DNA of 64,000 bases from Epiperipatus broadwayi (GCA_028023455.1 JAQFVV010000002.1:13888001-13952000); one strand, 5' to 3'. Positions 10,531-60,733 are shown, counted from the stretch's first letter. The notes: generated from the sequence alone by a model not told the origin. Translations and numbers: made by a program.

Positions 10531-12900
10531 TGTCATCATCATCATCATCATCAACCATTATCAATCCATTGCAGGATGGTCTCTCCAAGTTCAAACCATC
10601 TCCAATCTTTAGCTTCTCCACATCATCCCTGCACCCTTTTTTATTTCATCCACCCATCTCATATGTGGTCTCTTTCTTAGTCGTTTACAATCTCTTGGAA
10701 TCCAGTTTAAGATTTCAATTGTTCATCTATTATCATCTGTTCTAGCAATATGTCCAGCCCAACTCCACTTCAGTCTTTTAATTTTTTCAATAAGGTCAGT
10801 AACACCTGTTTGTTCTCTTACTCATATATTGCTTTTTCGATCTCTTCTTGTTACTTCTAACATGCATCTCTCTATACTTCTTTGAGTGGTCTGAAGTCTC
10901 TGTATTGCTCTTCTATTAGGTGTCTAAGTCTCAGACCCATAAGTAAGAACTGGTAAAACCCATTTATTAAAAACCTTTTTTTTTTCAAACCCATAGGCAT
11001 GTTTTCTTTTAGTATCAAGCTATTGCTACCAAAAGCACCCCAAACAAGTTTAATTCTATGATTAATTTCATCCATTATATTTCCATCTGTATTAATAATC
11101 TGACCAAGATATTTGTAGCTGTTAACTACTTCTAACTCATCATAACCAATCTTTATTTTCATATTTTGAGAAAATCCATTGAACATTACTTTAGTCTTTT
11201 TAACATTTATCTTTAGTCCTACTTTCATCTGATAACTCCTGCAACATTTCCTGCAGCTCTAAAGCATTATTTGCAAAAACAACTACATCATCTACAAAAT
11301 CTAAATGACTTAAATTATCTCCATTTACTTTTCACTTCTTTAGCTTCCCATTTTAATCCACAAAATACTTCTTGCAGCACTGCTGTAAAAAGTTTTGGAG
11401 ATATGGAGTCACCCTATCTTACACCCTTCTCAATGTTGACTTTCCTTGTATCATTATGTAATCTAATTGTTGCTGTTGCATTTTTATAAATATTCTTTAA
11501 AATATGACATTATCCTGGATCTATACATTGATGATCCAATGCTTTTTATAGAATCAAATGCCCTACAAATCCAAAGCATAATAGCAACTTATATTCATTT
11601 GTCCATTCTATAACTTCTCTCAATACCTGGATATGATCTATTGTATTAAAATCACTTTTAAATTCAGCTTGTTCTCTTGGTTGGTGGAAATCCAATGTTT
11701 TGTGTAGATGAGTTGTAATTATCTTGGTAAAAAATTTTGTATAAAGCTGATAAAAGACTGATAGGTCTGTAATTCTAATATCTTCTTTATCACCTTTTTT
11801 AAATATTAATATTAATACTGCATTTTTCCAATGATATGGCACATCTTTATCATTTATACATTTGGTATATAACTTAGCTAAAAAAATTTATATTTTTTCA
11901 CCTGCTTCTTTTAATATATCAATTATAATTCCATCCTTACCTGGAGCCTTTCCTTTCTTCATAAATTTAATTGCATGTCTCACTTCTTCATTTAAAATTC
12001 TGGGCAATTTGAAGATATAATAGATATAGGAAATACTTGTTTTTTTATTACTATATAATTCTTGATAGAAATCTTCTACCCATTTCATGGTCTCATCTCT
12101 CTTTTTAGTAATAGTTCCATCTTTTTTCCTTATTGCAGATATAAATTTCCTACCAAAACCAAAATGTTGTTTTACACTCTTGAGTCTTTTATTTTCTTCT
12201 ACAGCTTTCCTTGCTAGTTTACAGTTATACTTTCTTATATTGTTTTCAACTCTTTTCCGTACCATTTTACAGAATTCGAGGTATTCAATCTTTTTTAATG
12301 CATCATTTTTGTATATTTTCACATTCCTTCTTTTTTTCATAAATTCTCTGGTCTCGTAGAAATTTTATTGGTCAATTGCTGCTTTTTTCTACCAGCTATC
12401 TTTGTTGCAGTTTTTAAAAGTATATCAGTTATATTCTTATTAATTTCATTCAAACCTGAATCATGTTCAGAATCTACTAATACTTGAAACTGATTTGTAA
12501 GTTCTAATCTAAATTCATTAGAGTGTTTCTAAAGATTAGGAATATCAACTGTAAATATTGTTTTTCTTATTAATGTTTGTCTCTCTAGTTTTGCATTAAC
12601 ACATATCTTACATCTTACTAATCGATGATCACTTCCTGTGTTAAATTTTCTAAGAACATTACAATCTTGAAATATGTATTTTCTGTTAGTCAAAATATAA
12701 TCCAATTCTGCTGTATCTTCATTTGGATGTTTCCATGTCCATTTCCTTTTAACATTTTTCTCAAAAAAATAATTCATAATATAAAGTTTTCCTTTTTTTG
12801 CAAACTCCACAAGTCTATGACCTCTCTCGTTTCTATTACCATAACCAAAATTACCTACAGCACTTTCATCTTTTATTTGTTTACCAATTCTAGCATTAAA
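10531..12900 (-). mobile_element. RTE-clade LINE, 5'-truncated, frameshifted (APE C-terminus + RT + (GAT)n tail)
   Basis: Minus-strand ORF fragments with SDHRLVRCKI (APE), APGKDGI, WKNAVLILIFKKGDKEDI, YKYLGQII (RT). (TCA)n at 10533-10552 is the trinucleotide 3' tail typical of RTEs. Confidence 0.9.
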
Positions 12901-13709
12901 CATTATGTATGTTAAGGTATTTAGAAATTTCTTTACAATTAATAAGTGCAGATTTAATAAAATCAATATACGATAGCTAGATATGTATATTTTTCATCCT
13001 ATACTTCTGATATCTTTGTATTCTCTTCATTAATAATCTTGACAAGGTTGGTTAATATCTTTGTTTTTATTTTGCTTAGCATTTTTCTCTAATTGTTTTG
13101 TTTGAGTGGTAGCATTACAGGATATGGATAAGTGATCATAATTATATTCAATAGCTGAATACCACTTCAAATTAAGAAGAAAATATTAATCACAAACAAC
13201 TATGCTGAAAATCATTAATTGTAAAATGCTATCATGAGGCTTGTCAGATCCAAAGCATTTAACTCATTAAAGACAGATTGAAGAGTGTTTTCCAGCAGTT
13301 TTTGTATATTAAAAGTAAATGAAAGGTATTTACAGACATAGTACAAAGAAACTTTATATAAAAGAAAAATACAAAACTGCAAGAAATACCAATGGGATTT
13401 GATTACTGCAGACTATAAATTAAGAAATTAATGAAAGTAAGTTAGAACTTTACTGCAATATTTTATTTCAGGAGAAAACTATTTATTATTCAGACAAAAG
13501 ACTCGATATTAAATACTGTGGCTTCTATTGTCAATAAGAATATTCTTAGGATTGTCATTGGATATAATGTTAGAATGAACATTTAGTTTCAATTCAATTT
13601 CAGTCACCCATTTAACATTACTGTAATAATAACTTAGATACTATCAACTTAAAGTGGTTGTCAGGTGCAAACATAAATTCACAAAAATTTAATGCAGGGA
13701 AAATATATA

Positions 13710-16600: not shown

Positions 16601-17931
16601 TTAGCTATGTTTGTATAATGTCATTATTTATTGCAAAAACTATATTTAAGAAATATTTTTGTAAGGCATTATATAAAATTGTTAAACATTTTATGCAAGG
16701 CTTTAATTAACTAGATTTTAGGATGCAAACTCATTTATATAAAATAATTCTTGTAAATTTAAGGTGTAGATTTTTTCTTATATTCAGAAGATATTTTTTT
16801 TGTGGTATATTTTTAATATTAAAGTTTACATAAATTAACCCAAAAATTGGAATTTAAAGATATGGTACTTATTGCGTGTGTGTGTACAGTTTACGATATT
16901 CAGGCAACCAGTTTTTCATCTCAATGTAAACGTGATCAAGCTTAGAAAAAAAAAAAAAGCTGTGAATAAATTTTACAATATACTAGTAGCTGGTTTTCCA
17001 TCTCAGCCATGCACGATCAAGTTTATAAATAAAATTTCTTGGGTTTATTATTAGTTGAAAGTACATGTATTTTTTTATTTTTTTATTATCATTTCCAAAT
17101 TTGATGTGTAGTATTTCACATAATAAAATGTTGTTTAAGCATAATGCTAAAAGTTTTACAAAATTTAAAAATATATTTAAAGCTTATACAGACTTAAAAC
17201 ATCAAAAAGAAAGACTACTATTACTTTTGTATAAGAGAAAAAAGTTAGTGGGTGGGAAAAAAGACTATCTCCTAGAGTGTGTGTTCACTTGTAATGAAAG
17301 TCAAACATTTTGCTATTCATTTTATTTAAAAAATCAAATTTCAATATAGTTGAGAGGTTTTTCTTATTTTTTTCAGTGAATGGATGAATGAATAAACACA
17401 TACTCAATAAAATATATTTAAAATGTGTCCCCTCAATTTATTATTAGTAACTTTATTTTGAAAATTTTTTTGTTTATACTATAATCTTAATTTATATATG
17501 CATATTATGCATATAAATATATATAAATGCGCATGTTGAAAAATGCTGTATACTTGCAGTTCAACAAACAATATGTATTTTATTCTAATCAAAGTTTATC
17601 TACAAAATATGGACTATTATATGCAGTGTAAATGAGGAAAGCTTGTAACAAAATATAGCGGATATTGCTATTCCATTGTATTTTATTGTTTTGGATTTTA
17701 TTTATGATAAAAAAAAGTTAATATACCATTTGGATAACAAACAATTGTTATTGTTTGTGTATATCTTTATTACAGATGTTAGGACTGTTTTCATGGATTT
17801 TATTTTGAAATTATGTATTACATCATCTCTTTAATCATTAGTTTATTTTTAATTATTAAACATTGTTTAGAAATAGTTTATGAACAATACACAATGAATT
17901 ATATGTAAATATTTGTTTCCTTTATTTCTAG

Positions 17932-18076
17932 GTCTTGGAAAAGAAGGTAAACCTTTTACTGATCCCGAAATTTTACGTAAATTAACCAATTCAGTTAGTT
18001 GTGCATTAGATGAAGCTGCTGCTGCTCTAACTCGTATGAGAGCAGAAAATTCAAATCAAGGAGGACAAGTTGATGG
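17932..18076 (+). CDS. ANKHD1: Internal coding exon of ANKHD1/ANKRD17 (mask) orthologue, region just before the first ankyrin repeat
   Basis: Acceptor tttatttctag| at 17931 and donor GG|gtatgt at 18077. Translates (G)LGKEGKPFTDPEILRKLTNSVSCALDEAAAALTRMRAENSNQGGQVD(G), matching the conserved DPEVLRRLTSSVSCALDEAAAALTRM motif of ANKHD1/ANKRD17/Mask. Phase 1 start, phase 2 end. Confidence 0.95.
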
Positions 18077-19803
18077 GTATGTTAACTTCTTTAATGTTTG
18101 TACATTCATTAAGAAATTTACTGTATTTACCTTACATACTTAATATATTCTAAGGAAATGTAAGAAAGTAAAGGCTCATTAATAAAAATAAAATTTTATG
18201 TAACAATAGTTAATCACTGACAATATATTTTAATGAGCCAGAGAAATTTAAATTTGCCAGACTTGTTACTTTCAGTTTTCTCAAGCTGTGAAGAGCTAAA
18301 TATGACGGCTATTCTCTGTAATTAATATGCAATTGTGTGCTCTATTATTACATTTTATTGGCAGGCATTAAACTTGCTGAAAATTAAAAAGTAGCAGCAC
18401 TTTATGTAACTAGCAAAATATTTTTCACAGTTTAGAAAGCTTTAAATCTATTGGAAGAGTTGCAAGAAAATGATGCATATATGATTATAAGAGCAATCAA
18501 AAAAAATTCTCTTAGGAAGTTGAGATATTTGTATATCTATTCAAAAATTTATATAGAATGTTATGAAAACTGATTTAAGAAGTGATTTGATTAGATAAAG
18601 TATCAATTAAAAGTTATTTTTTTGATTTTTATATATATTTAAGTTAGAATATTCTTGACACAATTTTTGTAAATTTTGTAAAATACATTGTTTTGAAATG
18701 TTGAAACTTATTTACTACTTTTAATGATAAATTTTTATTAAATTGTGTATGTATAGTTTCCTCTCTCAGCATCAATGCAAAAATGCCATACAATACTTTA
18801 AGTGCATTTCTCTTGTTTCTTAAAATTAATATATCAGTGTGAATTATGCCGGATCATTAATGATGAGTGTTATGTTAATTTATTTCACTATTTTTTCAAA
18901 AACAAACAAACAAACAAAAAAAAAACAACAGTTAATTATGAATGTGAATAAGAGAAAGAAATTTGACATTTACAAAAATTCCATCCATTAATTTAGACTG
19001 TCTGCTTAATTTGTATAAGAATTGAAATATTTATGATTGTTATTCGTGAGCCTTTAAAATATAATGGATATGATTTTTTAATTCTTGTTTCAGTGTACAA
19101 TCATCAGATAGTCTTTAGAAATATTGTTATAACGAATAACTATAGAAGCCATTCATTATATTACCATAAAGGTTCTCTGTAGTTTAATTCTGTTTCTTGA
19201 AATTTTGCAGCAAATTTGTTAATATTTTTAATAGTTTTGTATTTTGCTGTATGAATTCAGCCTTAAATTTACTGCAACTTTTCTTCGACTATGGGAATAC
19301 GATTTTTTATAATTAGGAAATATTTGAACGTAGTCATAGGATTAATGTCTAAAACATTAATCCTTCGGTGCTGGATTTAGAAGATACTTCATATATTTAT
19401 GTGTTTGTGTATATATATGTATATTGTACCGCTTATGAAAAAAAGCGATCCCCGTGAAATTTGTGTTTACAATTTTTAAAAATAAAGTTCTCATAAACAA
19501 CGCAAAGGTTTTAATAAATAATATGTAAGTCAGCATAGAAATCTATAAAAATTTAAAGAGTTATTTGTTAAAAGTTTAATAAAAGAAGTTTGAAGAGTTT
19601 TTTGTGTTTAAAAAAAAAGTTGTTTGCTAAAAAGCAATTAATTCATAGTTTCACGGGGGAATTAAAAGTAGTTGATGTTCATATAATTAAAAATATTTCT
19701 TTTCATTTAAGTTAAAGAAAAAGGAAATCTTAAAAACTAAAACTTGATATTAGAAATATATATGTGCGTAAATGCCAAGGTGATTTTAAACATAGCAAAA
19801 TGA

Positions 19804-20445
19804 GTGCTTGTTGATAAAATAAATGTGTGTGTGATTAAGTCAAATAATTTTTTACTTTTGGGAAATATATGTATTCAAGTACGAGTGCGTGTGCGGCGCA
19901 ACTGTTCCATTGTTGACAAAAATTTTTTACATATACAAAATAAACCGCTTAACACTCACATCACACAGGATAAACCCAGATTATTGCTTCCATATATATC
20001 CAATTTACACAAGAAATTGCATTCCATCCTCAACAACAAATATCAGCTTTGTTTTCGAACCCCTCCAAACTCTAACAATTTAATTAATAACACTAAAGAC
20101 CAAACTCCACTTTTGCAGACCCTCCACACAGTATATAATATTGCATGTTCCAACAATAATTGTAAAGGCACATATTATGGGGAAAGCAGAGCATCTTTGT
20201 CCACACGATTAGCACAACATAAATATTCATACAATAGAGCTCGCAACGATCCTTCTACCTACTCAGTTTTCTATCAGCACCAGAGCACAAGTCACCACGA
20301 GTGCATTCCAGACAATCCCACAATCGTGTGTAGAGAGAGACATGACCTTAAAAGAAAAATCAAAGAGGCCTTATTCGTTTCACGAGACAATGATGCCATA
20401 AATAGGAAGGACACATGCTACGCTTTATCGAAGAAATGGAATTAG
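19804..20445 (+). pseudogene. Open PLE C-terminal fragment: RT thumb/linker + GIY-YIG endonuclease; the first ~35 codons are probably flank-derived
   Basis: 213-aa ORF from the track with VYNIAC..C...YYGE, R..QH, KRKIKEA and INR motifs. Confidence 0.8.
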
Positions 20446-20581
20446 CATATTTGCATATCATTAAATGTATTAGCAAGCTATGATTATGAAAGCAAGATCC
20501 TTTGAAAGCGCTCATTTTTAGTTATCTATTTTGTATTAATAGCTTTTGGGAACAGTTGCGCTGCACACGCACTTGTACTTG
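19876..20581 (+). mobile_element. 5'-truncated Penelope-like element (GIY-YIG endonuclease part) with inverted terminal copy
   Basis: ORF 19804-20445 contains TVYNIACSNNNCKGTYYGESRASLSTRLAQH...RKIKEALF (PLE GIY-YIG). 19876-19908 is a 33-bp inverted copy (2 mismatches) of 20549-20581. Confidence 0.85.
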
Positions 20582-22760
20582 AAATATGTGTGTGTTAAAT
20601 ATTAAAAAATGATATCGAAAGTTGTAACGAGCACAGACGTTCGTTACATTGTTTTTTTATATATAATTATTAAACAAGTTAAAATAAAAAGTTCGCATTT
20701 AAAAACTTTCTTTAAAAATTAAAAATTGAAATTAAAATATCGTCTTAAACTCTTATATATTAAGTCGCACAGATAATAAAAATTATTAAAATAAAATTTT
20801 TATTAAAGAAAAAGTATTTTAAAACTAAATTTTAAAAAGATTTGGAGATGAAATTATATCTTTAAATTTATCTTTAAATATATTTTTGATTTGGAAAACA
20901 GGTTAATTAATCAGAAATGGAAATGATTGTTAATTAGTTAAATGTAAACCAGCCTTCGGCATTTAAATGTAAAAACACTGGTCAGATAAGAAAACAATAA
21001 AAACTGTTAGCAAATAAGAAGAAATCCCTATGGAATCGGACCGCAGCGAAAGAATCATCACTCCATGACGCAATGTTAATTCAATCCTTTGACAAAAATA
21101 TAAAAAGGACAAGTTTTGGAAAGCATAAGTTAGTGGTTAGTGACTGGAAATTGATTGATTATTGACGATGTAACAGCTAGGTGTTAGCGCTGGGGGGATT
21201 GAAAAAGACGCACAGCTTCAATCCCTTCAGTTCTGCTAAGAAAGAGAAAAAAATGGGCCATCGTTTATACAATGAGGACCAACTACACGAAAAACAAAAT
21301 CTCCAAAGGATAAATAAATAAATCAACCGGATAATAATCTTCGGACGGCCAGGAATATAATAGGATGAACTATTTCAATAACCGTAAGAACTTTAAAATT
21401 TATGAACAGTAAATTAAAAACTTTTCATATTTAAAATGATTTTAATATTATTCTATCTGACCAACAATATTGATTAATTGGTTATAATTTTATTTAATGT
21501 ATTTAATTTGTAAAATCATTTCCATTTATTTATTTATTTATTTAATTTTGTTCTTTAAGTTGTTATGATTTCTGTTTTCCGTTAAATAAATTATAAAAAA
21601 AATGTTAAACTTGAGTCGGGCGTGAATGGCTGTATCGATTTGTAAAGATAATTAAGGGAGGGTAATCTTGGGTTGCTCATTTCGTGGTTGAATTGGTTCA
21701 ATGGATTGGATATATTTATGTAATTAGTAGGTGTAAGCATGAGATCCGCTACGGGCAGGATTATAAAATACGCCACACACCCTCTGTTTGCCTATGGATG
21801 GGTTTGTAAGTCGGCAGAAGACCGCAGCCCATTCCTATGGAGTTTTTAGTTTATTGATCTACTTGCCCACAGATGTCACATTCCTGTGGGTGGAGAGTCA
21901 ATGTCGTTTTTCTTTCTTCATATTGTTCAGATGTACATTCCTGACAATATAATTGTGTTGTCGTATCATGCTACATTGAATACATGAATGTATCAGATGG
22001 ATTGGCGCCGGTTGATTGCGAAATGTGTTGCCTAGGGTTAAATAGGGATAGAATATTTTATTTTCGAATGCAAATCTATATAGTATATTCAGGCTCGATC
22101 CTATAAAACTATTAAATTTAAGTTGTTTATAGACGCTTGCATAGATTGGCTATCGGTTAAATATGTTTGCGTTTTCATATTTGATCAAAATATATAGACA
22201 TTCGACAAATACTGATACCTTACGGTGAGTATCTAAAAGGTATTTATTCGGATGTCTTTTAAGTTATTGGTGACGATGCAGGTATCTTACGATGAATACT
22301 AGAGGGTTTCTTATATTTCCCTCTGCAATTGTCAGTAATCAATAACTTTGTATTTTGATCGTTTATGTTTACTTTGAAATGTTTTTGACCGTTGAAATCT
22401 ATGTAACCGATCTATAGCAACATATTAAACAGGTTAATATAATCCCATCTGTGCGAACTTGATTAAAAATGTAAATTTATAATATAATAGTAATGCAATG
22501 TAAATTAAAGTAAAATCAAAGTAAAAAAAAAAAAATAATGTTAAATGTTAAATTAAATGTAAATCACTAAAGTAATTTTAAACCTTATATATATGTGCAT
22601 AAATAAATGTTTGTATGTGAATTACTGGCAGTGGCTTACTTTATTCTTTTATATCCTAGTAAATGATATTATTAAATCTCTGCTATTCCACTGAGCTAGT
22701 GACATGGGCTAACGACCGGAATCAAAATTTAAGAAAAAAAAATATATATTTTTTTTGACT

Positions 22761-22973
22761 CACGTATCTGCCTACTTTATAAATTTTTCTAGGTTCAAAT
22801 GCCTAGATGGCGCCCCGTAGTGCAGTTTACGTTAAGTCGCATTCTCCGGATCGTTACAATGAATTATAACGATCCAAACGAAGTGGTAGATCGCATCGCA
22901 CCGCACCGCACTACCAAAGGGCGCCATCTAGGCATTTAAGCCTAGAAAAATTTATAAAGTAGGCAGATACGCG
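22761..22973. other. Central hairpin of the fold-back element: ~55-bp stem closing a 103-nt structured loop
   Basis: 22761-22815 pairs with 22919-22973. The loop has GGATCGTTA/TAACGATCC (22848-22875), TGGTAG/CTACCA (22884-22916), the alternative pairing GTAGTGC/GCACTAC, and 4x YCGCA (22891-22910). Confidence 0.85.
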
Positions 22974-23067
22974 CTGTTAGGATTCCACTTTATTTACATA
23001 TTTAGATCGTTAGCCCATTGTCACTAGCTCAGTGGAATAGCAGAGATTTAATAATATCATTTACTAG

Positions 23068-23099
23068 TATATAAAAGAATAAAGTAAGCCACTGCCAGT
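23068..23099 (+). promoter_or_regulatory. Putative TATA + initiator pointing outward from the palindrome centre (mirror copy on the minus strand at ~22624-22655)
   Basis: TATATAAAAG at 23068-23077, with CAGT 28 nt downstream (23096-23099). These are short motifs in AT-rich DNA, so support is weak. Confidence 0.3.
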
Positions 23100-23380
23100 A
23101 ATTATCATACAAACAGATTTATTTATGCACATATATATAAGGCTTAAAATTATTTTAGTGATTTACATTTAACATTTAACATTATTTTTAACTTTGATTT
23201 TACTTTAATTTACATTGAGTTACTATTATATTATAAATTTACATTTTTAATCAAGTTCGCCAGATGGGATTATAGAAGCTTGTTTTAATATGTTGCTATA
23301 GATCGGTTACATAGATTTCAACGTCAAAAACATTTCAAAGTAAACATAAGCGATCAAAATACAAAATTATTGATTACTGA

Positions 23381-23860
23381 CAATTGCAGAGAAATATAAG
23401 AAACCCTCTAGTATTCATCGTAAGATACCTGCATCGTCACCAACAACTTAAAAGACATCCGAATAAATACCTTTTAGATACTCACCGTAAGGTATCAGTA
23501 TTTGTCGAATGTCTATATATTTTGATCAAATATGAAAACGCAAACATATTTAACCGATAGCCAATCTATGCAAGCGTCTATAAACAACTTAAATTTAATA
23601 GTTTTATAGGATCGAGCCTGAATATACTATATAGATTTGCATTCGAAAATAAAATATTCTATCCCTATTTAACCCTAGGCAACACATTTCGCAATCAACC
23701 GGCGCCAATCCATCTGATACATTCATGTATTCAATGTAGCATGATACGACAACACAATTATATTGTCAGGAATGTACATCTGAACAATATGAAGAAAGAA
23801 AACGACATTGACTCTCCACCCACAGGAATGTGACATCTGTGGGCAAGTAGATCAATAAAC
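23381..23860 (+). pseudogene. Cryptic Cys-rich reading frame in the right arm (mirror on the minus strand of the left arm); product unknown
   Basis: Frame 23381-23833 has one stop (TAG 23558) in 151 codons, inside a candidate 123-nt GT-AG intron (23487-23609). CxxC motifs lie at 23726, 23764 and 23829. In the left arm CQEC-x18-CDIC is in one frame (21946-21869, minus). Confidence 0.35.
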
Positions 23861-26800
23861 AAAAACTCCATAGGAATGGGCTGCGTCTTCTGCCACTACA
23901 AACCCATCCATAGGCAAACAGAGGGTGTGTGGCGTATTTTATAATCCTGCCCGTAGCGGATCTCTGCTTACACCTACTAATTACATAAATATACCAATCC
24001 ATTGAACCAATTCAACCACGAAATGAGCAACCCAAGATTACCCTCCCTTAATTATCTTTACAAATCGATACAGCCATTCACGCCCGACTCAAGTTTAACA
24101 TTTTTTTTTTTATAATTTATTTAACGGAAAACAGAAATCATAACAACTTAAAGAACAAAATTAAATAAATAAATAAATAAATGGAAATGATTTTACAAAT
24201 TAAATACATTAAATAAAACTATAACCAATTAATCAATATTGTTGGTCAGATAGAATAATATTAAAATCATTTTAAATATGAAAAGTTTTTAATTTACTGT
24301 TCATAAATTTTAAAGTTCTTACGGTTATTGAAATAGTTCATCCTATTATTATCCGGTTGATTTATTTATTTATCCTTTGGAGATTTTGTTTTTCGTGTAG
24401 TTGGTCCTCATTGTATAAACGATGGCCCATTTTTTTCTCTTTCTTAGCAGAACTGAAGGGATTGAAGCTGTGCGTCTTTTTCAATCCCCCCAGCGCTAAC
24501 ACCTAGCTGTTACATCGTCAATAATCAATCAATTTCCAGTCACTAACCACTAACTTATGCTTTCCAAAACTTGTCCTTTTTATATTTTTGTCAAAGGATT
24601 GAATTAACATTGCGTCATGGAGTGATGATTCTTTCGCTGCGGTCCGATTCCATAGGGATTTCTTCTTATTTGCTAACAGTTTTTATTGTTTTCTTATCTG
24701 ACCAGTGTTTTTACATTTAAATGCCGAAGGCTGGTTTACATTTAACTAATTAACAATCATTTCCATTTCTGATTAATTAACCTGTTTTCCAAATCAAAAA
24801 TATATTTAAAGATAAATTTAAAGATATAATTTCATCTCCAAATCTTTTTAAAATTTAGTTTTAAAATACTTTTTCTTTAATAAAAATTTTATTTTAATAA
24901 TTTTTATTATCTGTGCGACTTAATATATAAGAGTTTAAGACGATATTTTAATTTCAATTTTTAATTTTTAAAGAAAGTTTTAAATGCGAACTTTTTATTT
25001 TAACTTGTTTAATAATTATATATAAAAAAACAATGTAACGAACGTCTGTGCTCGTTACAAAGTTAAAATGTAAAAACAAAATTTGCAATGCCTACCAAAT
25101 GAAAACACGTAATCAAAAGCTTATCTAAGGAATGTATTCAAAAACAATGGAGAGATAGCCGGCGGACATAAAAACCAATTACCAAAATGACAACAGGTCA
25201 TCTATATAAATAGTCCGGATTTTCATCAATCAGATCAGTTGAGTTCAATCTATCAGTTGAGATCACAATCGGATTAAATCAGTTCTCAGTCAGTCTTCTC
25301 ATGTATTTGATAATAAAGAACATGCAGCGTTAATCGTCATCAGAATCATACGACTTTGCTCCAGCCTGAGTCCGATGAAACAGCCAACCTGCCCAGGAAA
25401 AAGTAATGCCTGCTTAACAACTTGAAAAATCGCCAGGAATATTTAGCTGTCTAGGAATAGTACCACAGAATACTAAGCATTAAATCTCCACAAGAAAAAC
25501 CTCAAATCTAATCGGTTAGAAATATTTTTACGTGAAGTAACAACCAGCAAGAAGACAAAGTCCTATTGAAAATAAAGTTCACAGCAAGAAGTATCCACGG
25601 TCTAAAATCCTAGGTAACAACATTTTCTTATTTCTATTTATAATTAATGTAGCCATTGCAATAATTTGAAGCCTTCCAGAGTCAGTTAACAAATGAACTC
25701 TAGCATGCATAAAGAACTATTGATGTGCGTGTCTTGAAATGTCGTATATGTGAATGCTTTAGTATATTTTATATTGATTTCATGTATTTTAAGTGCTTTG
25801 TATTATTTAATACTCTTTGTTATATTATATTGTATATCTTACTATAATATGTGTGGCCATTATATGCAATTATCGTTGTCTAATTTAATAAAGTTTTATA
25901 AAAGTAGTTTAAACTGTGCAATAATAAATGTTTAGTTAAATAAATTATCTTTAAACTTAAAGCTTGTCGGTCAATTCTTTTTACCACTAATTGAAGCAAC
26001 AATTTGTTATTGTATTACTTTTGATTGAGCTAGTCATGGGATACTTCAAACGCTGGATTATGGGCCTGCTGTCCCAGCACATTAGTTCTAATAGCTAACT
26101 GGCGCCTGAGGTTTACCTTAAAACAAATAAAAGTGCTTGGATAGTAGATCGTGTTATGCGTTGCATAGCTCGGTCTGATCGTGGGTATTGTTGATAGTTC
26201 TGCTATCGATGATATTCTCCCCTCGGCTCGAATCATCTTACGAATGCATCCGGTACAATATATACATGTTTATTGGTACAGTAAGATTCTTGAATCCATA
26301 TTATTTTTAAACAGTAATTAATACCATGCAACTTGTATTTTAACATTGTAAACAATATATTTTACATTTTCTCCCCATCTCTTTTAAAAAATACATATAT
26401 ATTTGACTTTTTTTTATTTGTGATGAAAATTGAATGCTACTGTCATAGCATGTGTTCTACCTACTAGATAGCAGCAATATAGGACATAACAATGAATGAT
26501 GAAAAAAACTAATTCATATGAATTAAAATGCACATATTTACTGTTGATTTTACAGCAAGAAATTTATTAAATAAATGTATAAAAATAATTTATTTAGTAA
26601 AGAAATAAATGTTTATTATTGAATTTATTGCAAAAATTGTATTAAATAAAAGCATGAAAATAATTTATATGGCAACCAAAGTAATACAAAATGAATAGGT
26701 CTTGTTTAATATTTTATGTTAAGATAATTTTTGATGTGAAGTTAAATTTGAAAGCATGAAAATAAAGCAAGCACAATGTTACAAAAATTAACTCATATGT

Positions 26801-27890: not shown

Positions 27891-28676
27891 CTACAATTTT
27901 ATAAAAACTTCACAAATCTATAAGAAAACTGCAAATTTAGTTCATTTTAATATTGTTCAAAGTTTAATACTAATTAAATGTAGCAGTAAACACACTAAAA
28001 AAAGTCTTTATAAAAATATTTATTAATTACAGGGCATTCATTGTTTTAAATACTATCATTATTATAATATTTCAAATAATATTAACTTAATGAAAATGTT
28101 TGTAATATGGTAGCATTGAAAATTGAATCAATGGGAAAAACAAAACAAAACCATAATACATCACAGCAGTAAATTTTTGTAAATAAGGTATTTTCATCTC
28201 AGATTTTCATACACATCAGCATTCTAAATTAAATTTATTATGGTTATTTTATAATATCAGGCAATAATTGTTTTTCGTTAAAATATGGATTTATAGAATA
28301 TTGTATTTCATCTAAAGTTATTAGATAATAATATTCAAGGATTATTTTCAAATGTTTTATTGTCTTTTACATTACATCCAGTATAGTTGAACTATTTAAT
28401 CTTTCATAATAGGATTTTACCTTGTTACAGATATTGTAAGAATTCAATATGTCTCATTCTTTTAATGATGAATCATGCTAACATCATTATGGGTATTAAA
28501 AATATTTGAGCCAATGACCTTTAAATCCTTTTAAAAAAAAAAAAATGAATAAGTTCAACATTTAATGAGATTATTCAAGATCTTTACACTAAGGCAGCAG
28601 GTCCCAATCTTTTTTCTCTTGCATATTTCTCTATTAGGATTTTTCCTCTCGTATATTTCTTAGGTTTTTTCCTCTC

Positions 28677-28813
28677 ATGTGGCCATTGATTAGTATCCTC
28701 TCTCTTCATTATCCACATCCATCTTTCAAAAAAGTTTGTTTCTTTTCAAATTATGTGGCCAGTGATTAGTATCCTCTTTCTTCATTACCCACATTCATCT
28801 TTCAAAAAAGTTT
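28677..28813. repeat. Near-tandem duplication, period ~76 bp
   Basis: atgtggcca(t/g)tgattagtatcctct...atctttcaaaaaagttt starts at 28677 and 28753. Confidence 0.8.
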
Positions 28814-29019
28814 TTTGTTTTTTTCTAATTTGTTAGGTTAGCTAAAATCAAACTACTAAAATTAACCTAATGATATTTATTAGGTTTAATTTTGATTTTA
28901 GATTTAACAATTTATTTCAATTTTTAAATTTATTCAACATGGCTTTTAATAATTGTAATGCAATCCTTGAGCTTGTTTCATGGATCCTAATTTTTTAAAA
29001 TCAGGTTCAAATGAAGACA

Positions 29020-30630
29020 GATATAATGTCATTTAGACATTTGGTTCATAACTTTGCTAAAATTTTTTCTATTTCTTCACCTGCTTCTTTTAATATATCA
29101 ATTATAATTCCATCATTACCTGGAGCCTTTCCTTTCTTCATACATTTAATTGCATGTCTCACTTCTTCATTTAAAATTCTGGGCAATTCGGAAGATGTAA
29201 TAGATATAGGAGGTACTTGTTCTTTATTACTATATAATTCTTGATAAAAATCTTCTACCAATTTCATGATGTCATCTCTCTTTTTAGTAATAATTCCATC
29301 TTTTTTTTTTTATTGCAGATATAAATTTCCTACCAATACCAAAATGTTGTTTTACATTCTTGAGACTTATTTTCCTCTACAGCTTTCATTGTTAGTTCAC
29401 AGTTATACTTTCTTATATCATTTTCAACTCTTTTCCGCACTATTTTACAAAATTCGAGATATTCAATCCTTTTTAATGCATCATTTTTGTATATCTCATA
29501 TTCCTTCTTTTCTTCATAAATTCTCTAGTCTCAGTAGAAATTTTATTGGTCAATTGCTGCTTTTTTCTACCAGCTATCTTTGTTGCAGTTTTTAAAAGTA
29601 TATCAGTTATATTCTTATTAATTTCATTCAAACCTGAATCATGTTCAGAATCTACTAATACTTGAAACCGATTTGTAAGTTGTAATCTAAATTCATTAGA
29701 GTGTTTCTAAAGATTAGGAATATCAACGGTAAATATTGTTTTTCTTAATAATTTTTGTCTCTAGTTTTACATTAACACGTATCTTACACCTTACTAATCG
29801 ATGATCACTTCCTGTGTTAAATGTATTAAGAACATTACAATCTTGAAATATATATTTCCTGTTAGTCAAAATATAATCCAATTTTGCTGTACCTTCATTT
29901 GGATGCTTCCATGTCCATTTCCTTTTAACATTTTTCTCAAAAAAAGAATTCGTAATATAAAGTTTTTCTTTTTCTGCAAACTCCACAAGTCTATGTCCTC
30001 TCTCATTTCTATTACCATAACCAAAATTACCTACAGCACTTTCATCTTTCATTTGCTTACCAATTCTAGCATTAAAGTCTCCCATAACAATTTTAAAATG
30101 TTTACTCTGATCAAAAGCCTTTTGTACATCCATATAAAAATATTCTACTACTTCATCACTATGAGAACTTGTTGTGGCATAAACCTGAATTATCTGCATT
30201 TGGTATCTGCTATTAAGTTGTATAACTAATCTTGCCACTCTGTCCGATACACCATCAATCTTGACAATATTGTTCTTCCACTTTTTATTTATAATTAATC
30301 CTACTCCACTTGTATTTCTAATATTTGTGCCTTTATAATAGAGTATATGTCCACTTTTTAAATCATCTCTTCACCTTTTCTTCTAACTTCACAAAGTCCA
30401 ATAATGTTCCATTTAATATAAGACAATTCTTCTAATTCTTGCAATCTTCCTTCACTTGAAAGTGATCTGCAGTTGTATGTACCTAAATAAAAAGTCATCA
30501 TCAAATGGCAACCTGGGTCCGCAATGGGGATTCTTAGCACCCTCCGCCTTCGGCCACCAACCGCTGCCGTGGTTGGTGACTTTATAACCTCCTGGGAATA
30601 AGGGCCATGCTTTATTTTTGTCTGTCATAA
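29020..30630 (-). mobile_element. RTE-clade LINE, 5' part (N-terminus + APE + start of RT), 3' part missing
   Basis: LGTYNCRSLSSEGRLQEL..IIGLCEVRRKGE, IIQVYATTS, VMGDFNARIG, LDYIL, SDHRLV and APGNDGI. Closely similar to the 10531-12900 copy. Confidence 0.92.
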
Positions 30631-30870
30631 TTGTATATATGTATTGGAAAAATATTTATCATTTACACAAACATTCATTCTGCCTTATCAGGCACTGAGA
30701 AGAAAGACCATGGTGTTTCTTGATCTTAAACTCAGAAGTAAAAAGCCAATATTACTGACCACGCTGGCTAATAATGCGTACCTTTTATAAAAAAAATTAG
30801 TGATTAGCTGAGATTATTTCCCCCAAAAAATCTATTGCCTTATATTTAATATTAATTTAGATATTTTAAA

Positions 30871-30973
30871 TTATAATATTTAAGTTATAGTTAAAGCAAT
30901 ATTTTACATTATAATATTTAAGTTATAGTTAAAGCAATATTTTACATTATAATATTTAAGTTATAGTTAAAGC
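30871..30973. repeat. 38-bp AT-rich minisatellite, ~2.7 copies
   Basis: Unit ttataatatttaagttatagttaaagcaatattttaca at 30871, 30909 and 30947 (partial). Confidence 0.9.
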
Positions 30974-33900
30974 TAATGGTTAAGTTATACTTTATATGTA
31001 CTGTATTTTAATTTATAATTATTAATTTGCTTTTTAACTACATAATTTTTTAATTATATTTTATCATTTTTATGTATCATTTTTTAAATTGATATAATAA
31101 AAGAAGACATTGTGTAGTGTGTTAAAAGAAAAGATTCACTTTAGAATGTATTTTAGCGAAATTGTTAATATGTTGCCCAGGTTGGGGGTGACATTTTGTT
31201 TTTTTTTTAATATAAAAAAAAACTTTTGAATTCATATTGTATTTTTATTATTTTTACATAATTTTTATGTTTGTCTATAGTACAATCAATATATGGGATT
31301 TCATATATATATAATCACACATATATATATATACACACACTATCTAATTTTTTTCTTTAGGATAACCAAGTTGTGGTCTCACATAACTAGAACCTTGGGT
31401 TTTAGTAATAAATCTTCAATATTAAAACAATTCTTGTTAAATGGATTTAATTCAGCACTATTATGTCTAAAGCAGCTTTTATTTTTGGGCACCAATGTTT
31501 ATAAACTAGTTTATTAATACACTGTTCTAGTAATGATTATTTGCAATTTTTTCCTATTTTTTAAAATTTATATGCTCAGGCAATATTTTGCAAAAAATAA
31601 AATGCATTAGCACATATTAGCTTTCAAACAAAAATAAAAAATTGTTTCTTTGGATATTTATAAAACAAAATATTTAATAAAAGTAAAAAAACATCAAAGT
31701 ATACTATAACTATTTCATTTTCCATAAAATATTATTACATCAAACATACATTTATATAAACTAATAATAATACATATTGATAAAATAAAATATATAATGC
31801 AATGCCTAATGTTAAATTAAGTAACTCATTATCAAGTTTCTTAGTTCATTTAAATTCATACATTTAAAGAAAATAATAGATAGACTTTATAATGAATTAT
31901 TTCTCACATAAGTATTCACAAAGTCTTAACTTAGATTTTCCTTTCGGTTATTTCCATATATGGCTATGGCCTTGTGTTCTGTTGTAAGTTTCCTTTTTGG
32001 TTTCACAAGCCATTTTTTGATAGAATATTATTGCAGTTCGTGATTTTCTTTTGGTGTTGACAGTAAGCTAGGTATGTAGGCAGTGTCTTAGATAAAAGCT
32101 TCCTTTTTGCAGTAGATAATTAGCATGGCCATATCGCTGAAAGCATTTGGTTTGATAGCTCCTCATATTTTACCAATATATATATGGTTTCTATATTAAT
32201 AATGTAAGTTTTTTACTTAGACTAGCATGATAACTGATGAATAAGCAGAACTTAAGAATCAGCATTCAAATGATAATAGGACTTAACAGCAGAACAGCAG
32301 CATAAGATAATCTGAGAATCATATAATCAATCTAAAATAATCTGTTGACTGCTTTATATACTGCTACCACAATTCCTTGCATCACTGTTTATCACACTTT
32401 TTATATAGTTTTTCCTCTATGTGGGTCTATAATTCCACATAACATTTTTTCTCATCAAAACTTTACATAATAAAAACATATTTTTGTCTGTTTTATATAG
32501 TACACATTTAGGCTATAAAAAGAATACTTTAAATGCAAAAATGTTTATTTTACATCTTAAGAATTATTATATCAAAGTAAAAAAATAATTTTTCATTTTA
32601 AAGATTAAAACTAAATTTTAATTAATTCTTTTTTTAAAAAATTAGACATTCAAGTCAAGCATCTTTAATTAAACTTATTTCAAGCTTTTTCATTACAGAT
32701 AAGACATTTTTAGTCAATTATCTATAATCAAATTGAGTTTTAATATTTTATTTGTTGATAAGACATTTTTTTTGTCAATTATCCGTAATTAAATTAAGTT
32801 TAATCATGTGATTAAACTTATGAGTTTTCTGGGTGTGGAAAAAGAATATAAATAATGATAAAATATCTTACCAATGTTAAGCATATTTCCCCTTTTTAAT
32901 TTTTTTTTTTTTGTTTCTTTGAACAATCTACTTCAATCTCTGCATGCTATTACATTTTATACATATTAATGGTACAATATATTACATATATGTAAAAGTA
33001 AATTGCACAGTTTTATTGAATTATGGTACCAATTACAAGTCATGTTAATATTTCTGTAGGAATTTTATTTGCATTGATTATGAATTTGATTAAGTTATTT
33101 CTCTGGAATTCCCTCAATAGTGAGCAATGAAGATACCTTAACTTTGTGCTTAATTGTTTCTTCAAGTCATCGTCCCCCCTTTCCAAAGTTATGGTAAAAG
33201 CAATCATTGTCTACTTTTATATTAGAAAATTCTACTTGCAAGAAACAACATGGTTTTCAAAAGAATTTGCTTTGAACTTTTAGCTTATATTTTTTACTTT
33301 TAGAATTTAACAAAAAAATTTAAAAGAATTTGGACAGCTATAAAGTTTTTGATAAATTACTTTTTAGAAAGCTTTGTTTATACAATTTATATTTTGAATT
33401 TAAAAATAGATATCTCAGTTTTTTTTAAAATCAAGTAAATTAGAGGATGAATGGATTTTTATCCAATATTTATTTTGTAAATGATAATGCACTTGAAGAC
33501 TTTTTTCTAATATTTTCAATCCACAGTCTTACTAATATTAGAATTTAAATTCAAAATTTTCTTTTAAGCATCAATTATCTTCCATCTTATTTACCCATAG
33601 AAAACTCATTAAATTGTTCCTTGTATTATAACATCCAAAAAATTGTTTAATGAAGCAATGAAAATTTAATTCTGCCTCAATTAGCTAAAATGTAACTTTC
33701 CTATATCTTTTCCAATTTTTGATTTTGCAGTTTTTCAAAAATCATTCAAATTATATCTGTATTTGATGATTACTTTTCTAGTGATTATGTTTTCTCTATT
33801 TGGCAAAATTTATTATAAATATATATATTTTTCAGAATCAAAATTTATTTTTTCCATTTCACAATCATTTATCTTATTTAAAATTCAAACTTGACAATTG

Positions 33901-35019: not shown

Positions 35020-35164
35020 GTCTTTAGCAGAAGCTTGCAGTGATAATGATGTAGGCACTGTTAGACGTATATTGGATGAAGGTGGAAGTGTACATGAAAC
35101 TTCAGAAGAAGGTGAAAGCTTATTATCTCTTGCATGTTCAGCGGGTTATTACGAACTTGCACAG
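35020..35164 (+). CDS. ANKHD1: Internal coding exon of ANKHD1/mask, first ankyrin repeats
   Basis: Acceptor tttttttatag| and donor CAG|gtaata. The first base completes the GG|G codon from the previous exon. Translates SLAEACSDNDVGTVRRILDEGGSVHETSEEGESLLSLACSAGYYELAQ. Confidence 0.97.
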
Positions 35165-35659
35165 GTAATAATAACAATAATTAATTTCAAAAATGTATAC
35201 TTTAAATATAAAACATTTGTGTCAATACTTGATAAATTAATTACAATTTGTTATATAATTTATGGTTTAGAACCACAAATATTTTAAATATAATCATAAA
35301 AGGTATAAGTCAATGAAGCATTATTATTAAAAGCATTTTTTTTTATCAGTTATACTATTGAATATACTTTTATTAACATTTGATAATTAATAAATAGTCT
35401 TATGATCATTCATTCTTTTTAAAAGTTTATGAGTAAGAGTACTTAGAAATAATTTTTCATTAAAAAAAAAAAAAGCATTGAGTAATATTTACATAGTTTA
35501 AGTACATTTAGATATAATAAATTAAATACAAGATTTAAAAAACCAAAATTAATAAAAATAGGTAAACAAGTGTACATTAATAAATGGAGAAACTCATAAA
35601 AATGTTCAGTTGTTACGTTCTAGCTAAAGATAATTTTTCTAGGCAGATAGTTAAGAGCA

Positions 35660-36075
35660 TATAAATTGTACACACACGTATATTTGTGACATACAGAATG
35701 GAACAGTTCAATGATATTAATAATATTTAACTGCGCTTGATTTCGATACTGTGTACCAGACTTGTGGCGACTTAACTAAACTGACCTGTTAATATTTCAT
35801 TGTTTGCCCAATGGGATACTGGTCATTCTTTTATTGATAATGTTGTTACACTTGGTAGTAAATCAGGACTGTTTTATCTTCCTCTTCCTATCATTAGACT
35901 TTTTGCAGACTGTACTAATTATTTGACGGTAAAATTTATGTCCAGTATTTTTTTTGTGATTGGAGAAAACAGAATTAACTTGAGAGTCCACTTTAAGATT
36001 TTTTTATATTGATGTATGTGCTGTCATATAAATGCGTTGATATTATAATGGACTATGTTTTTATCCTATTTTTTT
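35660..36075 (-). mobile_element. 3' fragment of a Penelope-like element (same family as 41665-42720)
   Basis: The + ORF at 35800 and the - ORF at 42378-42641 are homologous antisense shadows of the same GIY-YIG C-terminus (..RKRKIKE..). Confidence 0.75.
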
Positions 36076-41400: not shown

Positions 41401-41408
41401 AAGGTCCT

Positions 41409-41662
41409 CTGACAAATTTTGGACATATTCTAATAGGAGTTTGAATTCTGTCAACATTTTTACAGTTGATAAATGTACATAATTATCTTATGTTTCCATA
41501 TAGGCTGTTATATTTTGTAGTTTGTATATCCAAGTTTCCCTGTCAAATTTTGGATATATTCTAATAGGGGTTTGAATTCTGTCAACATTTTTACATTTGA
41601 TAAATGCACACAATTATCTTATGTTTCCCTATAGGCTGTTATATTTTGTAGTTTGTATATCT
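41409..41662. repeat. ~131-bp tandem duplication at the junction of two oppositely oriented PLE pieces
   Basis: caaattttgga.atattctaatagg.gtttgaattctgtcaacatttttaca...gtagtttgtatatc repeated at 41409 and 41540. Confidence 0.9.
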
Positions 41663-60532: not shown

Positions 60533-60733
60533 ATATGCCTTGTTTAAATAATAATTATTTGTAAGATAAAAAGTTAACTTAGCATAGTTTTATGTATATG
60601 TGCGAAACACATGTATTAAGTAATTGTATTAAAACAGGCAAAACTCTCTATACGTATTGCCACTCAGTGCAAGCCAGAGTAATGTCAGAAGCTTGTACAT
60701 AAAATCCCCATCTCGTGCCTACTCATCCAATAT

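What the first reader, a model, noticed from the sequence alone, without database searches (positions are those of the whole stretch)
20623..25059. 4.4-kb fold-back element with TGT...ACA ends and an exact 4-bp TSD: candidate undescribed mobile element
Seen: two ~2.1-2.2 kb arms that are reverse complements almost base for base in the outer parts, a 103-nt spacer, TGT/ACA ends, and AAGT duplicated exactly on both sides. No transposase, integrase or RT is visible inside. Known: TG...CA ends with a 4-bp TSD are the footprint of retroviral-type DDE integrases (gypsy LTR elements, Ginger DNA transposons), but Ginger TIRs are short, LTRs are direct repeats, and Polinton TSDs are longer. Inference: a non-autonomous element mobilised in trans by a Ginger/gypsy-like integrase, whose body is a self-complementary snap-back molecule. 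It could be an integrated head-to-head replication intermediate of a hairpin-ended linear DNA (virus- or plasmid-like).
Basis: partly seen in the sequence, partly recalled or inferred. Interest (0 to 1): 0.9.

Follow-up and report, generated by a model that had tools for sequence, protein, structure and literature searches.

The report
Inverted pair of LTR-like repeats
The 4.4-kb fold-back is real: two slightly different copies of a 2.2-kb non-coding, LTR-like repeat lie tail to tail in an intron and appear to have been inserted as one piece by a retrovirus-type integrase, but only this one copy could be examined.

Summary
Two arms of about 2.2 kb (20623-22860 + and 22863-25059 -) are reverse complements, end in TGT/ACA, and are flanked by AAGT on both sides. 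The chance of such a flank match is about 1%.

The "103-nt spacer" is not a spacer. It is the diverged inner end of the arms, and only 2 bp separate them.

Each arm is a complete unit with its own 8-bp terminal inverted repeat (TGTAACGA...TCGTTACA). All five exact copies of that 8-mer in the 64-kb window lie at the outer ends or the centre of the element. Each arm therefore has the end structure of a solo LTR.

The arms are a mosaic. The outer 1.68 kb has 2 substitutions. The inner 0.56 kb is 47-92% identical, with conserved blocks. They are therefore two variants of a family, not a snap-back self-copy. Nothing inside codes for a protein.

Best reading (confidence about 0.4): a tail-to-tail pair of LTR-like units integrated in one step through its two TGT ends by a gypsy-type DDE integrase. 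It is probably an aberrant by-product of an LTR retrotransposon.

Rivals are a Ginger-like non-autonomous DNA transposon, nested insertions followed by deletion, a PLE-type event, and an assembly artefact.

No other copy was found, because no eukaryotic genome could be searched. The family status is untested.

The parts
20619..20622 (.). Left copy of the 4-bp target-site duplication AAGT
   Evidence: Read directly. Chance of a flank match is about 1%.
20623..22860 (+). Left unit (L), 2238 bp, non-coding and LTR-like. It starts TGTAACGA and ends TCGTTACA plus AT.
   Evidence: No Pfam hits in its ORFs.
20623..20648 (+). 26-nt terminal motif. The 8-mer TGTAACGA and its complement TCGTTACA are 10 nt apart and can form a small hairpin.
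   Evidence: two exact copies, one at each end. DNA fold -5.9 kcal/mol, z = -3.35.
21334..21356 (+). 23-bp stretch present in L and absent from R, flanked by AATA-type microhomology
   Evidence: alignment; sequence read.
22763..22815 (+). Conserved 53-nt block in L, 96% complementary to its partner in R. It holds a TATAAA, a CTAGG...CCTAG hairpin and TGGCGCCC, and lies between two unalignable patches.
   Evidence: I12.
22848..22860 (+). Inner tip of L: GGATCGTTACAAT, carrying the terminal 8-mer TCGTTACA plus AT
22861..22862 (.). Centre: 2 bp (GA) between the two units. If AT is not counted as part of the units, the gap is 6 bp, ATGAAT, at 22859-22864.
22863..22875 (-). Inner tip of R: GGATCGTTATAAT, one mismatch to the L tip
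22919..22971 (-). Conserved 53-nt block in R, the partner of 22763-22815
   Evidence: I12.
22863..25059 (-). Right unit (R), 2197 bp, the same unit inverted. It is a different variant in its inner 0.56 kb.
25034..25059 (-). 26-nt terminal motif of R, identical to that of L
25060..25063 (.). Right copy of the 4-bp target-site duplication AAGT
   Evidence: Read directly.

Best explanation
The fold-back is two copies of one ~2.2-kb non-coding unit set tail to tail with 2 bp between them.

Each unit has the end structure of a retrotransposon long terminal repeat: 5'-TGTAACGA...TCGTTACA-3', an 8-bp terminal inverted repeat with TG...CA. The pair entered the intron as one piece. Both outward-facing ends are the same 'TGT' (U3-type) end. 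A 4-bp staggered cut, the stagger typical of gypsy-group integrases, left AAGT on each side.

The most likely source is an aberrant product of an LTR retrotransposon. Two DNA copies from two different family members were joined at their other (U5-type) ends, and the integrase then used the two free TGT ends. The inner ends still carry two bases (AT) beyond the CA, as unprocessed ends of retroviral-type DNA do. The outer ends stop exactly at TGT/ACA, as integrated ends do.

If the units are LTRs, the internal parts were lost afterwards by LTR-LTR recombination in each half. Alternatively, the unit is a whole non-autonomous element.

Shown: the anatomy, the unit ends, the duplication, the lack of genes and the mosaic difference between the arms.
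Inferred: the enzyme, the one-step insertion, the end-joining and the LTR identity.
For: - The exact 8-mer TCGTTACA occurs 5 times in 64 kb against 0.77 expected, with no shuffle reaching 5. All five are in the element: two at each outer tip and one at the inner tip of L. A one-mismatch copy lies at the inner tip of R.
- The 13-nt inner tips face each other across 2 bp, against 0.02 expected.
- TGT/ACA ends and an exact AAGT duplication. Chance is about 1%.
- TGTNR is the end pattern of Gypsy LTRs (PMC2836005). Gypsy-group elements of D. melanogaster make 4-bp duplications and Pao-group elements 5-bp (PMC3276498).
- Integrase removes two nucleotides from each LTR end before joining (PMC1905944 abstract). 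This fits AT being kept at the inner tips and absent from the outer ones.
- The arms are different variants. There are 2 substitutions in 1681 outer columns. The inner part has 92%, 47%, 91%, 55% and 92% blocks. This is as expected for two family members with conserved cis-acting blocks, not for a self-copy.
- Neither unit alone has a matching 4-bp flank (AAGT/ATGA for L, GAAT/AAGT for R). Only the pair has one.
- No ORF, Pfam domain, tRNA or Rfam family lies inside.
Against: - This is a single locus. No other copy, no direct-LTR partner, no gag/pol, and no primer-binding site or polypurine tract next to a unit was found in the window. No eukaryotic genome could be searched, so 'LTR' rests on end structure alone.
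- If the units are LTRs, an extra step is needed to lose both internal regions.
- The sharp contrast between a near-identical outer 1.68 kb and a diverged inner 0.56 kb is not predicted in detail. It needs chimeric templates or gene conversion.
- Seven 1-bp gaps clustered at 21710-21907, all in one arm and with no substitutions among them, look like consensus errors. They raise some doubt about local assembly quality.
- The AT beyond the CA is only 2 nt of evidence.
Confidence: 0.4

Rival explanations
1. The element is a non-autonomous cut-and-paste DNA transposon moved by an integrase-like (Ginger-type) transposase. It is either a true fold-back family with 2.2-kb terminal inverted repeats, or a composite of two adjacent inverted copies of a 2.2-kb element that moved using its two outermost ends, as bacterial composite transposons do.
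For: - TGTNR ends and a 4-bp duplication are shared by Ginger1, Ginger2 and Gypsy LTRs (PMC2836005).
- The element has no coding capacity.
- The pair, not the single units, carries the duplication.
- The terminal 8-mer is repeated in inverted orientation 10 nt inside each tip, which resembles multiple transposase-binding sites.
- The arms being two variants fits a composite of two family members.
Against: - Ginger1 inserts at CCGG/CCGT and Ginger2 at RTATAY. Here the target is AAGT within GAAAGTTAAA.
- Ginger TIRs are 40-270 bp. Here they are 8 bp per unit or 2.2 kb for the pair.
- GingerRoot makes 6-bp duplications.
- No integrase-like ORF is present anywhere in the window.
Confidence: 0.2
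2. The structure arose locally in several steps, and the pair never moved. A full-length LTR element inserted at AAGT. A second family member then inserted in the opposite orientation just inside its 5' LTR. A later deletion between the identical 8-mers at the end of the inverted LTR and at the end of the first element's 3' LTR removed everything else.
For: - It uses only common processes: nesting and microhomology-mediated deletion.
- It explains why the arms are two different variants.
- It explains why the outer AAGT pair is intact while neither unit has its own duplication.
- The terminal inverted 8-mer means both orientations end in the same TCGTTACA on the + strand.
Against: - It needs an insertion within 2-6 bp of an LTR end, plus a deletion whose two endpoints fall exactly in the two 8-mers.
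- No remnant of an internal region, a primer-binding site or a third LTR copy is left.
- The 2-6 bp between the units show no primer-binding-site start.
Confidence: 0.15
3. It is an assembly or consensus artefact: for example, a solo unit wrongly doubled, or two haplotypes or paralogous copies joined in inverted orientation.
For: - Palindromes are hard to assemble.
- Seven 1-bp gaps are clustered in one arm with no substitutions among them. This looks like an unpolished consensus.
Against: - The repeat stops to the base at TGT/ACA, and the flanks are unique and non-complementary. A fold-back chimeric read would mirror the flank as well.
- The arms differ in a structured, mosaic way, and the inner tips are complete unit ends.
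- The exact 4-bp duplication.
Confidence: 0.07
4. It is a target-primed reverse-transcription product of a non-autonomous retroelement. This would be Penelope-like or LINE-dependent 'dual priming', in which both nicked target strands prime on the 3' end of an RNA. The result is two inverted full-length copies meeting head to head.
For: - The window holds several RTE-type fragments and putative Penelope-like fragments. One lies 40 bp upstream.
- Penelope-like elements often form inverted pLTR structures, with palindromes at pLTR ends and flanking duplications (PMC3846280).
Against: - TG...CA ends with an 8-bp terminal inverted repeat are not a feature of target-primed elements.
- The arms have no similarity to any RTE or Penelope-like fragment in the window.
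- No hammerhead or other Rfam match was found.
- Reported Penelope duplications in A. vaga are 8-10 bp and pLTRs are about 200 bp.
Confidence: 0.05
5. This is the first reader's alternative: a snap-back (self-primed) molecule, or a head-to-head replication intermediate of a hairpin-ended linear virus- or plasmid-like DNA, that was integrated.
For: - The overall palindromic form.
- The near-identity of the outer 1.68 kb.
Against: - A self-templated copy starts with identical arms. Here the inner 0.56 kb contains unalignable patches next to conserved blocks.
- Both inner tips are complete unit ends rather than an arbitrary turn-around point.
- There are no genes of any kind.
- There are no hits in the viral collection.
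Confidence: 0.05

Closest known systems
Solo LTR / LTR of a Ty3-gypsy-group retrotransposon
   Same: - TGTNR...ACA ends and a short (8-bp) terminal inverted repeat.
- Non-coding.
- A 4-bp duplication of the kind gypsy-group integrases make.
- The 2.2-kb size is within my recollection of the known range (not checked here).
   Different: - Two units lie in inverted, tail-to-tail order instead of direct order around gag-pol.
- The duplication flanks the pair, not each unit.
- No primer-binding site or polypurine tract is adjacent.
- No full-length partner could be looked for.
Ginger1 / Ginger2 (TDD) DNA transposons (Bao, Kapitonov & Jurka 2010, PMC2836005)
   Same: - Integrase-type TGTNR ends, a 4-bp duplication and inverted terminal repeats.
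- The authors themselves proposed that Ginger TIRs arose from two LTRs in opposite orientation.
   Different: - The target here is AAGT, not CCGG/CCGT or RTATAY.
- Repeats are 2.2 kb (8 bp per unit), not 40-270 bp.
- There is no transposase and nothing at all between the repeats.
Composite transposons and 'double' elements (bacterial IS-flanked composites; maize double Ds; both recalled from my own knowledge, not tested here)
   Same: Two inverted copies of a unit that each have both ends, able in principle to move through the two outermost ends.
   Different: - Those are cut-and-paste systems with known transposases and usually carry cargo between the copies.
- Here the copies abut (2 bp apart) and the enzyme is unknown.
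Penelope-like element inverted pLTR structures (PMC3846280)
   Same: Inverted repeat insertions flanked by duplications, with small palindromes at repeat ends. Putative Penelope-like fragments are abundant in this window.
   Different: - No RT/GIY-YIG sequence in or between the arms.
- TG...CA ends.
- A 4-bp rather than 8-10-bp duplication.
- Units ten times longer than reported pLTRs.
Drosophila Foldback (FB) elements (features recalled from my own knowledge)
   Same: Long inverted arms with little or nothing between them, and no coding capacity.
   Different: - FB arms are built of tandem subrepeats and make 9-bp duplications.
- Here the arms are unique sequence with a 4-bp duplication and TG...CA ends.

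Membership tests
LTR of a Ty3-gypsy-type retrotransposon (solo LTR) | TG...CA termini with a short terminal inverted repeat | tested here: met
   Each unit has TGTAACGA...TCGTTACA (R has TCGTTATA at its inner tip)..
LTR of a Ty3-gypsy-type retrotransposon (solo LTR) | 4-6-bp target-site duplication flanking each element or solo LTR | tested here: not met
   L is flanked by AAGT/ATGA and R by GAAT/AAGT. Only the pair is flanked by AAGT/AAGT.
LTR of a Ty3-gypsy-type retrotransposon (solo LTR) | The same sequence occurs as direct repeats around gag-pol, with a primer-binding site after the 5' LTR and a polypurine tract before the 3' LTR | not testable with these tools
   - No eukaryotic genome can be searched by DNA.
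- In the window there is no third copy and no gag/pol domain.
- TGGCGCCC lies 36/47 nt inside the unit end, and the arms diverge right after it. It is therefore not placed or conserved as a primer-binding site.
Ginger1 / Ginger2 DNA transposon | TGTNR termini and a 4-bp duplication | tested here: met
   TGTAA... ends and AAGT/AAGT flanks. Criteria from PMC2836005.
Ginger1 / Ginger2 DNA transposon | Target preference: CCGG/CCGT (Ginger1) or RTATAY (Ginger2) | tested here: not met
   The inferred pre-insertion target (flanks joined on a single AAGT) reads GAAAGTTAAA.
Ginger1 / Ginger2 DNA transposon | Terminal inverted repeats of about 40-270 bp | tested here: not met
   2.2 kb for the pair, or 8 bp for the single unit.
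Ginger1 / Ginger2 DNA transposon | An autonomous relative with the same ends encoding a gypsy-integrase-like transposase without reverse transcriptase | not testable with these tools
   None is in the window. The source genome is not searchable.
Foldback (FB) superfamily | Arms made of tandem subrepeats; 9-bp duplication (criteria from my own knowledge) | tested here: not met
   TRF finds only short AT-rich microrepeats in the arms. The duplication is 4 bp.
Penelope-like element (inverted pLTR insertion) | RT plus GIY-YIG ORF, or arms homologous to the pLTR of such an element | tested here: not met
   The arm ORFs have no domains. The arms do not match any putative PLE fragment in the window. 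No hammerhead ribozyme was found.
Polinton/Maverick or hairpin-ended linear virus or plasmid | Polymerase, integrase or capsid genes; 6-bp duplication for Polintons | tested here: not met
   There are no genes. The duplication is 4 bp. There are no viral-collection matches.
DIRS-type retroelement | Inverted terminal repeats with an internal complementary region and a tyrosine recombinase; no duplication (criteria from my own knowledge) | tested here: not met
   Nothing lies between the arms, no ORFs are present, and an exact 4-bp duplication is present.

The most novel reading that the evidence does not exclude
The locus is a member of a living family of non-coding fold-back elements built from two inverted LTRs and moved as DNA by a retroviral-type integrase. 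That would be the transitional form between gypsy-like LTR retrotransposons and Ginger-type TIR transposons that Bao et al. (2010) could only postulate.
Probability: 0.12. Interest if true: 0.75.

Novelty: new variant of a known kind. Interest (0 to 1): 0.45.

Why it matters
If the pair did go in as one piece, it is natural evidence that a retroviral-type integrase can use two like ends. That would turn direct LTRs into terminal inverted repeats. This is the step proposed, but never observed, for the origin of Ginger DNA transposons from gypsy-like retrotransposons (PMC2836005).

There is also a practical side. The element places a hairpin with a 2.2-kb stem inside the primary transcript of a conserved gene, an ANKRD17/ANKHD1/mask orthologue. 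This makes it a candidate source of double-stranded RNA and small RNAs, and a potentially fragile near-perfect palindrome.

If it turns out to be a one-off aberrant insertion or a local rearrangement, it is only a curiosity.

Tried and rejected
**Other copies**
- The 26-nt terminus, a 24-nt internal piece and the 27-nt conserved block were scanned in the window, the viral contigs, the metagenome contigs (both scans used) and the prokaryotic genomes (both scans used). All gave 0 hits outside the element.
- BLASTN of a whole arm and of both flanks against the window found no further copy and no paralogous empty site.

**Proteins**
- The longest arm ORF has no homologue.
- The arm ORFs have no significant Pfam hits (best E=0.016, below the family cut-off).
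- Exact look-up of the neighbouring ORF found nothing.

**RNA**
- No Rfam family reaches its threshold.
- A sub-threshold MIR6140 hit across the centre (54.5 bits against 140) reflects only the hairpin shape.
- No tRNA was found. A T-arm-like CTAGG...CCTAG hairpin next to TGGCGCC was therefore dropped as a tRNA-derived feature.

**Primer-binding-site idea**
- TGGCGCCC looked to me like the start of a primer-binding site.
- It was rejected because it lies inside the unit, is not preceded by a CA end, and the arms diverge immediately after it.

**Species identification**
- The RTE query found no hit above 58% identity.
- The host exon is too conserved to place. The best hit is 90% identical, on a TARA ocean scaffold with no DNA similarity.
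- The neighbouring ORF gave no hits.
- The organism remains an unidentified AT-rich metazoan.

**Families rejected**
GingerRoot (6-bp duplication), Polinton, FB and DIRS.

They were primer-binding-site starts and LTR-end tetranucleotides of well-known retroviruses and retrotransposons, and tRNA ends. I stopped, used none of them in any tool call or as evidence, and give none here.

Full report
**1. The observation**

The inverted repeat is real. Collinear inverted blocks run from 20622/25060 inwards to 22815/22919, and a gapped alignment of the arms is 95.5% identical over 2.2 kb.

Reading both strands shows TGT at 20623-20625 and ACA at 25057-25059. AAGT sits directly outside on both sides, at 20619-20622 and 25060-25063.

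The 26-nt terminus occurs twice in the window, once at each end in inverted orientation, against none expected.

A 4-bp flank match has a chance of about 1% in this AT-rich sequence.

The flanks are unique and are not mirror images of each other. That argues against a fold-back chimeric read.

The arms hold no ORF above 90 aa stop to stop, no significant Pfam hit (best E=0.016, below the family cut-off), no homologue, no tRNA and no Rfam family.

**2.

The "103-nt spacer" is the diverged inner end of the arms.
- The arms align again at their tips. GGATCGTTACAAT (22848-22860, +) faces GGATCGTTATAAT (22863-22875, -) across 2 bp, against 0.02 expected.
- The tip contains TCGTTACA, the exact complement of the outer terminal 8-mer TGTAACGA.
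- That 8-mer occurs five times in 64 kb against 0.77 expected, and no shuffle reached five. All five are in the element: two at each outer tip (10 nt apart in opposite orientation, forming a small hairpin) and one at the centre.

So each arm is a complete unit bounded by TG...CA with an 8-bp terminal inverted repeat. That is the end structure of an LTR. The fold-back is two such units tail to tail: L at 20623-22860 (+) and R at 22863-25059 (-).

**3. The arms are two variants, not one copy folded back**

| L coordinates | Identity between arms |
|---|---|
| 20623-22300 | 2 substitutions in 1681 aligned columns, plus ten indels |
| 22301-22714 | 92% |
| 22715-22762 | unalignable (47%) |
| 22763-22815 | conserved (91%; 96% in the ungapped repeat) |
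| 22816-22847 | unalignable (55%) |
| 22848-22860 | conserved (12 of 13) |

- The ten indels in the outer part include one of 23 bp with microhomology, and seven 1-bp gaps clustered at 21710-21907, all in R.
- The conserved 53-nt block holds a TATAAA, a short hairpin and TGGCGCCC.
- Conserved blocks between free-running patches are what two members of a repeat family look like when cis-acting sites are constrained.
- A self-primed or replicated hairpin would start with identical arms and diverge evenly.
- Why the outer 1.68 kb is near-identical is not settled. It could be chimeric templates (same U3-type part, different R-U5-type part) or arm-to-arm gene conversion.
- The seven clustered 1-bp gaps are more like consensus errors than evolution.

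**4. Surroundings**

The element lies in a ~17-kb intron of an ANKRD17/ANKHD1/mask orthologue on the + strand. The exons are near 17913-18100 and 35021-35167.

The window is 27% G+C and full of retroelement debris.
- RTE-type LINE fragments carry endonuclease domains.
- Three fragments looked to me like Penelope-like elements. The ORF at 19804-20445, 177 bp upstream of the fold-back, is 40% identical to one at 58476-58787 that follows a weak RVT_1 match.
- No library or search confirmed the Penelope-like label, so it is from memory only.
- The arms resemble none of these fragments.

The species could not be identified. Its own repeat proteins are absent from the protein collection, where the best RTE hit is 58% identical.

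**5. Mechanism**

Shown:
- Two complete TG...CA units in inverted order, 2 bp apart.
- An exact 4-bp duplication around the pair. There is none around either unit alone (AAGT/ATGA for L, GAAT/AAGT for R).
- No genes.

From the literature:
- TGTNR ends are the Gypsy LTR pattern, shared by Ginger (PMC2836005).
- Gypsy-group elements of D. melanogaster make 4-bp duplications and Pao-group elements 5-bp (PMC3276498).
- Retroviral integrases trim two nucleotides from each LTR end and make 4-6-bp duplications (PMC1905944 and PMC4422553 abstracts).

Inferred:
- A retroviral-type DDE integrase joined the two outward TGT ends of a pre-formed tail-to-tail dimer to a 4-bp staggered cut.
- The inner ends keep AT beyond the CA, as untrimmed ends would. 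The outer ends stop at TGT/ACA, as integrated ends do. This is only 2 nt of evidence.
- The dimer would come from end-joining of two DNA copies of different family members at their U5-type ends.
- If the units are LTRs, each half later collapsed to a solo LTR. If the unit is a whole non-autonomous element, no further step is needed.

I put this reading at about 0.4.

**6. Rivals**

- **Ginger-like non-autonomous DNA transposon, or a composite of two inverted copies (0.2).** It has the same end and duplication type. It fails the Ginger target preference (CCGG/CCGT or RTATAY against AAGT) and the TIR length (40-270 bp).
- **Nested opposite insertions followed by a deletion between the identical terminal 8-mers (0.15).** It explains the two variants and the intact outer duplication using ordinary processes. 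It needs very exact endpoints and leaves no internal remnant.
- **Assembly artefact (0.07).** The clustered 1-bp gaps hint at weak consensus. The base-exact ends, unique flanks and mosaic arms speak against it.
- **Penelope-like or LINE dual priming (0.05).** Such elements do build inverted pLTR insertions with palindromes and duplications (PMC3846280). They lack TG...CA inverted termini, and the arms match no such element here.
It is contradicted by the mosaic arms, the complete inner tips and the absence of any gene.

**7. Comparison and novelty**

The unit works like, and looks like, a gypsy-type LTR. Membership cannot be shown without a full-length partner.

The pair works like a TIR transposon of the integrase type. 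It fails two of the three testable Ginger criteria.

I found no paper in the held library describing a TSD-flanked tail-to-tail pair of LTRs. That is weak evidence, because subscription literature is missing.

Bao et al. explicitly proposed two oppositely oriented LTRs as the origin of Ginger TIRs. This locus has that architecture.

I rate it a new variant of a known kind. Interest is moderate (0.45) because it is one copy with an unproven family. It would be high only if a census shows it to be a mobile family.

**8. Limits**

- No tool here searches eukaryotic genomes by DNA. All scans of the viral, metagenome and prokaryote collections were blank.
- Copy number, polymorphism and read support are therefore untested.
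- I stopped, used none in a tool or as evidence, and print none here.

Noticed in passing
window 19804-20445 (+), with inverted 35-nt repeats at 19874-19908 and 20549-20583: A 213-aa ORF lies 177 bp upstream of the fold-back. It is 40% identical to ORF 58476-58787 and is bracketed by a 35-nt inverted repeat (I14). It looked to me like the GIY-YIG end of a 5'-truncated Penelope-like element. Pfam, NCBIfam, PDB and homologue searches gave nothing.
   Followed up: partly
window 57355-58787 (+); 42108-42617 (+); 35805-36018 / 42387-42600: These are further putative Penelope-like fragments. One has a weak RVT_1 match (E=0.037) followed by the GIY-YIG-like ORF. A 214-nt inverted pair, 76% complementary, lies at 35805-36018 and 42387-42600 (I4). 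One arm of that pair sits just after a host exon.
   Followed up: partly
window 10875-12993 (-), 29049-30624 (-), 45750-46250, 56097-57125 (+), 59289-60060: At least five fragments of one RTE-type LINE family are present, 80-98% identical to each other, with Exo_endo_phos_2 domains. The best outside relatives are only 58% identical. All are broken by stops or frameshifts.
   Followed up: partly
window 17913-18100 (+) and 35021-35167 (+): Two exons of an ANKRD17/ANKHD1/mask orthologue were identified. The exon at 35021-35167 is up to 90% identical to database proteins and the exon near 17913-18100 up to 78%. The fold-back therefore sits in a ~17-kb intron of a conserved gene, on the sense strand's transcript.
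   Followed up: yes
window 21710-21907 versus 23799-23993: Seven single-base gaps, all missing from the right arm, lie within 200 bp with no substitutions among them. They open a 78-aa ORF in the right arm only. This may be a local consensus error in the assembly.
   Followed up: no
window 22765-22969 (-): A sub-threshold Rfam match to the plant miRNA precursor family MIR6140 (54.5 bits, gathering score 140) spans the centre of the fold-back. It is most likely only a reflection of the long hairpin shape.
   Followed up: partly
window 60691-61513: A cluster of ~90-120-nt direct and inverted repeats, relatively G+C-rich for this window, has about 440-bp spacing (D3, D10, I11, I20). A diverged copy lies at 52696-52785. 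It may be a short interspersed or MITE-like repeat.
   Followed up: no
window 41400-41661; 38439-38667; 30861-30999; 28667-28818: Short tandem duplications with periods of 131, 127, 38 and 76 bp lie in the intronic repeat debris.
   Followed up: no
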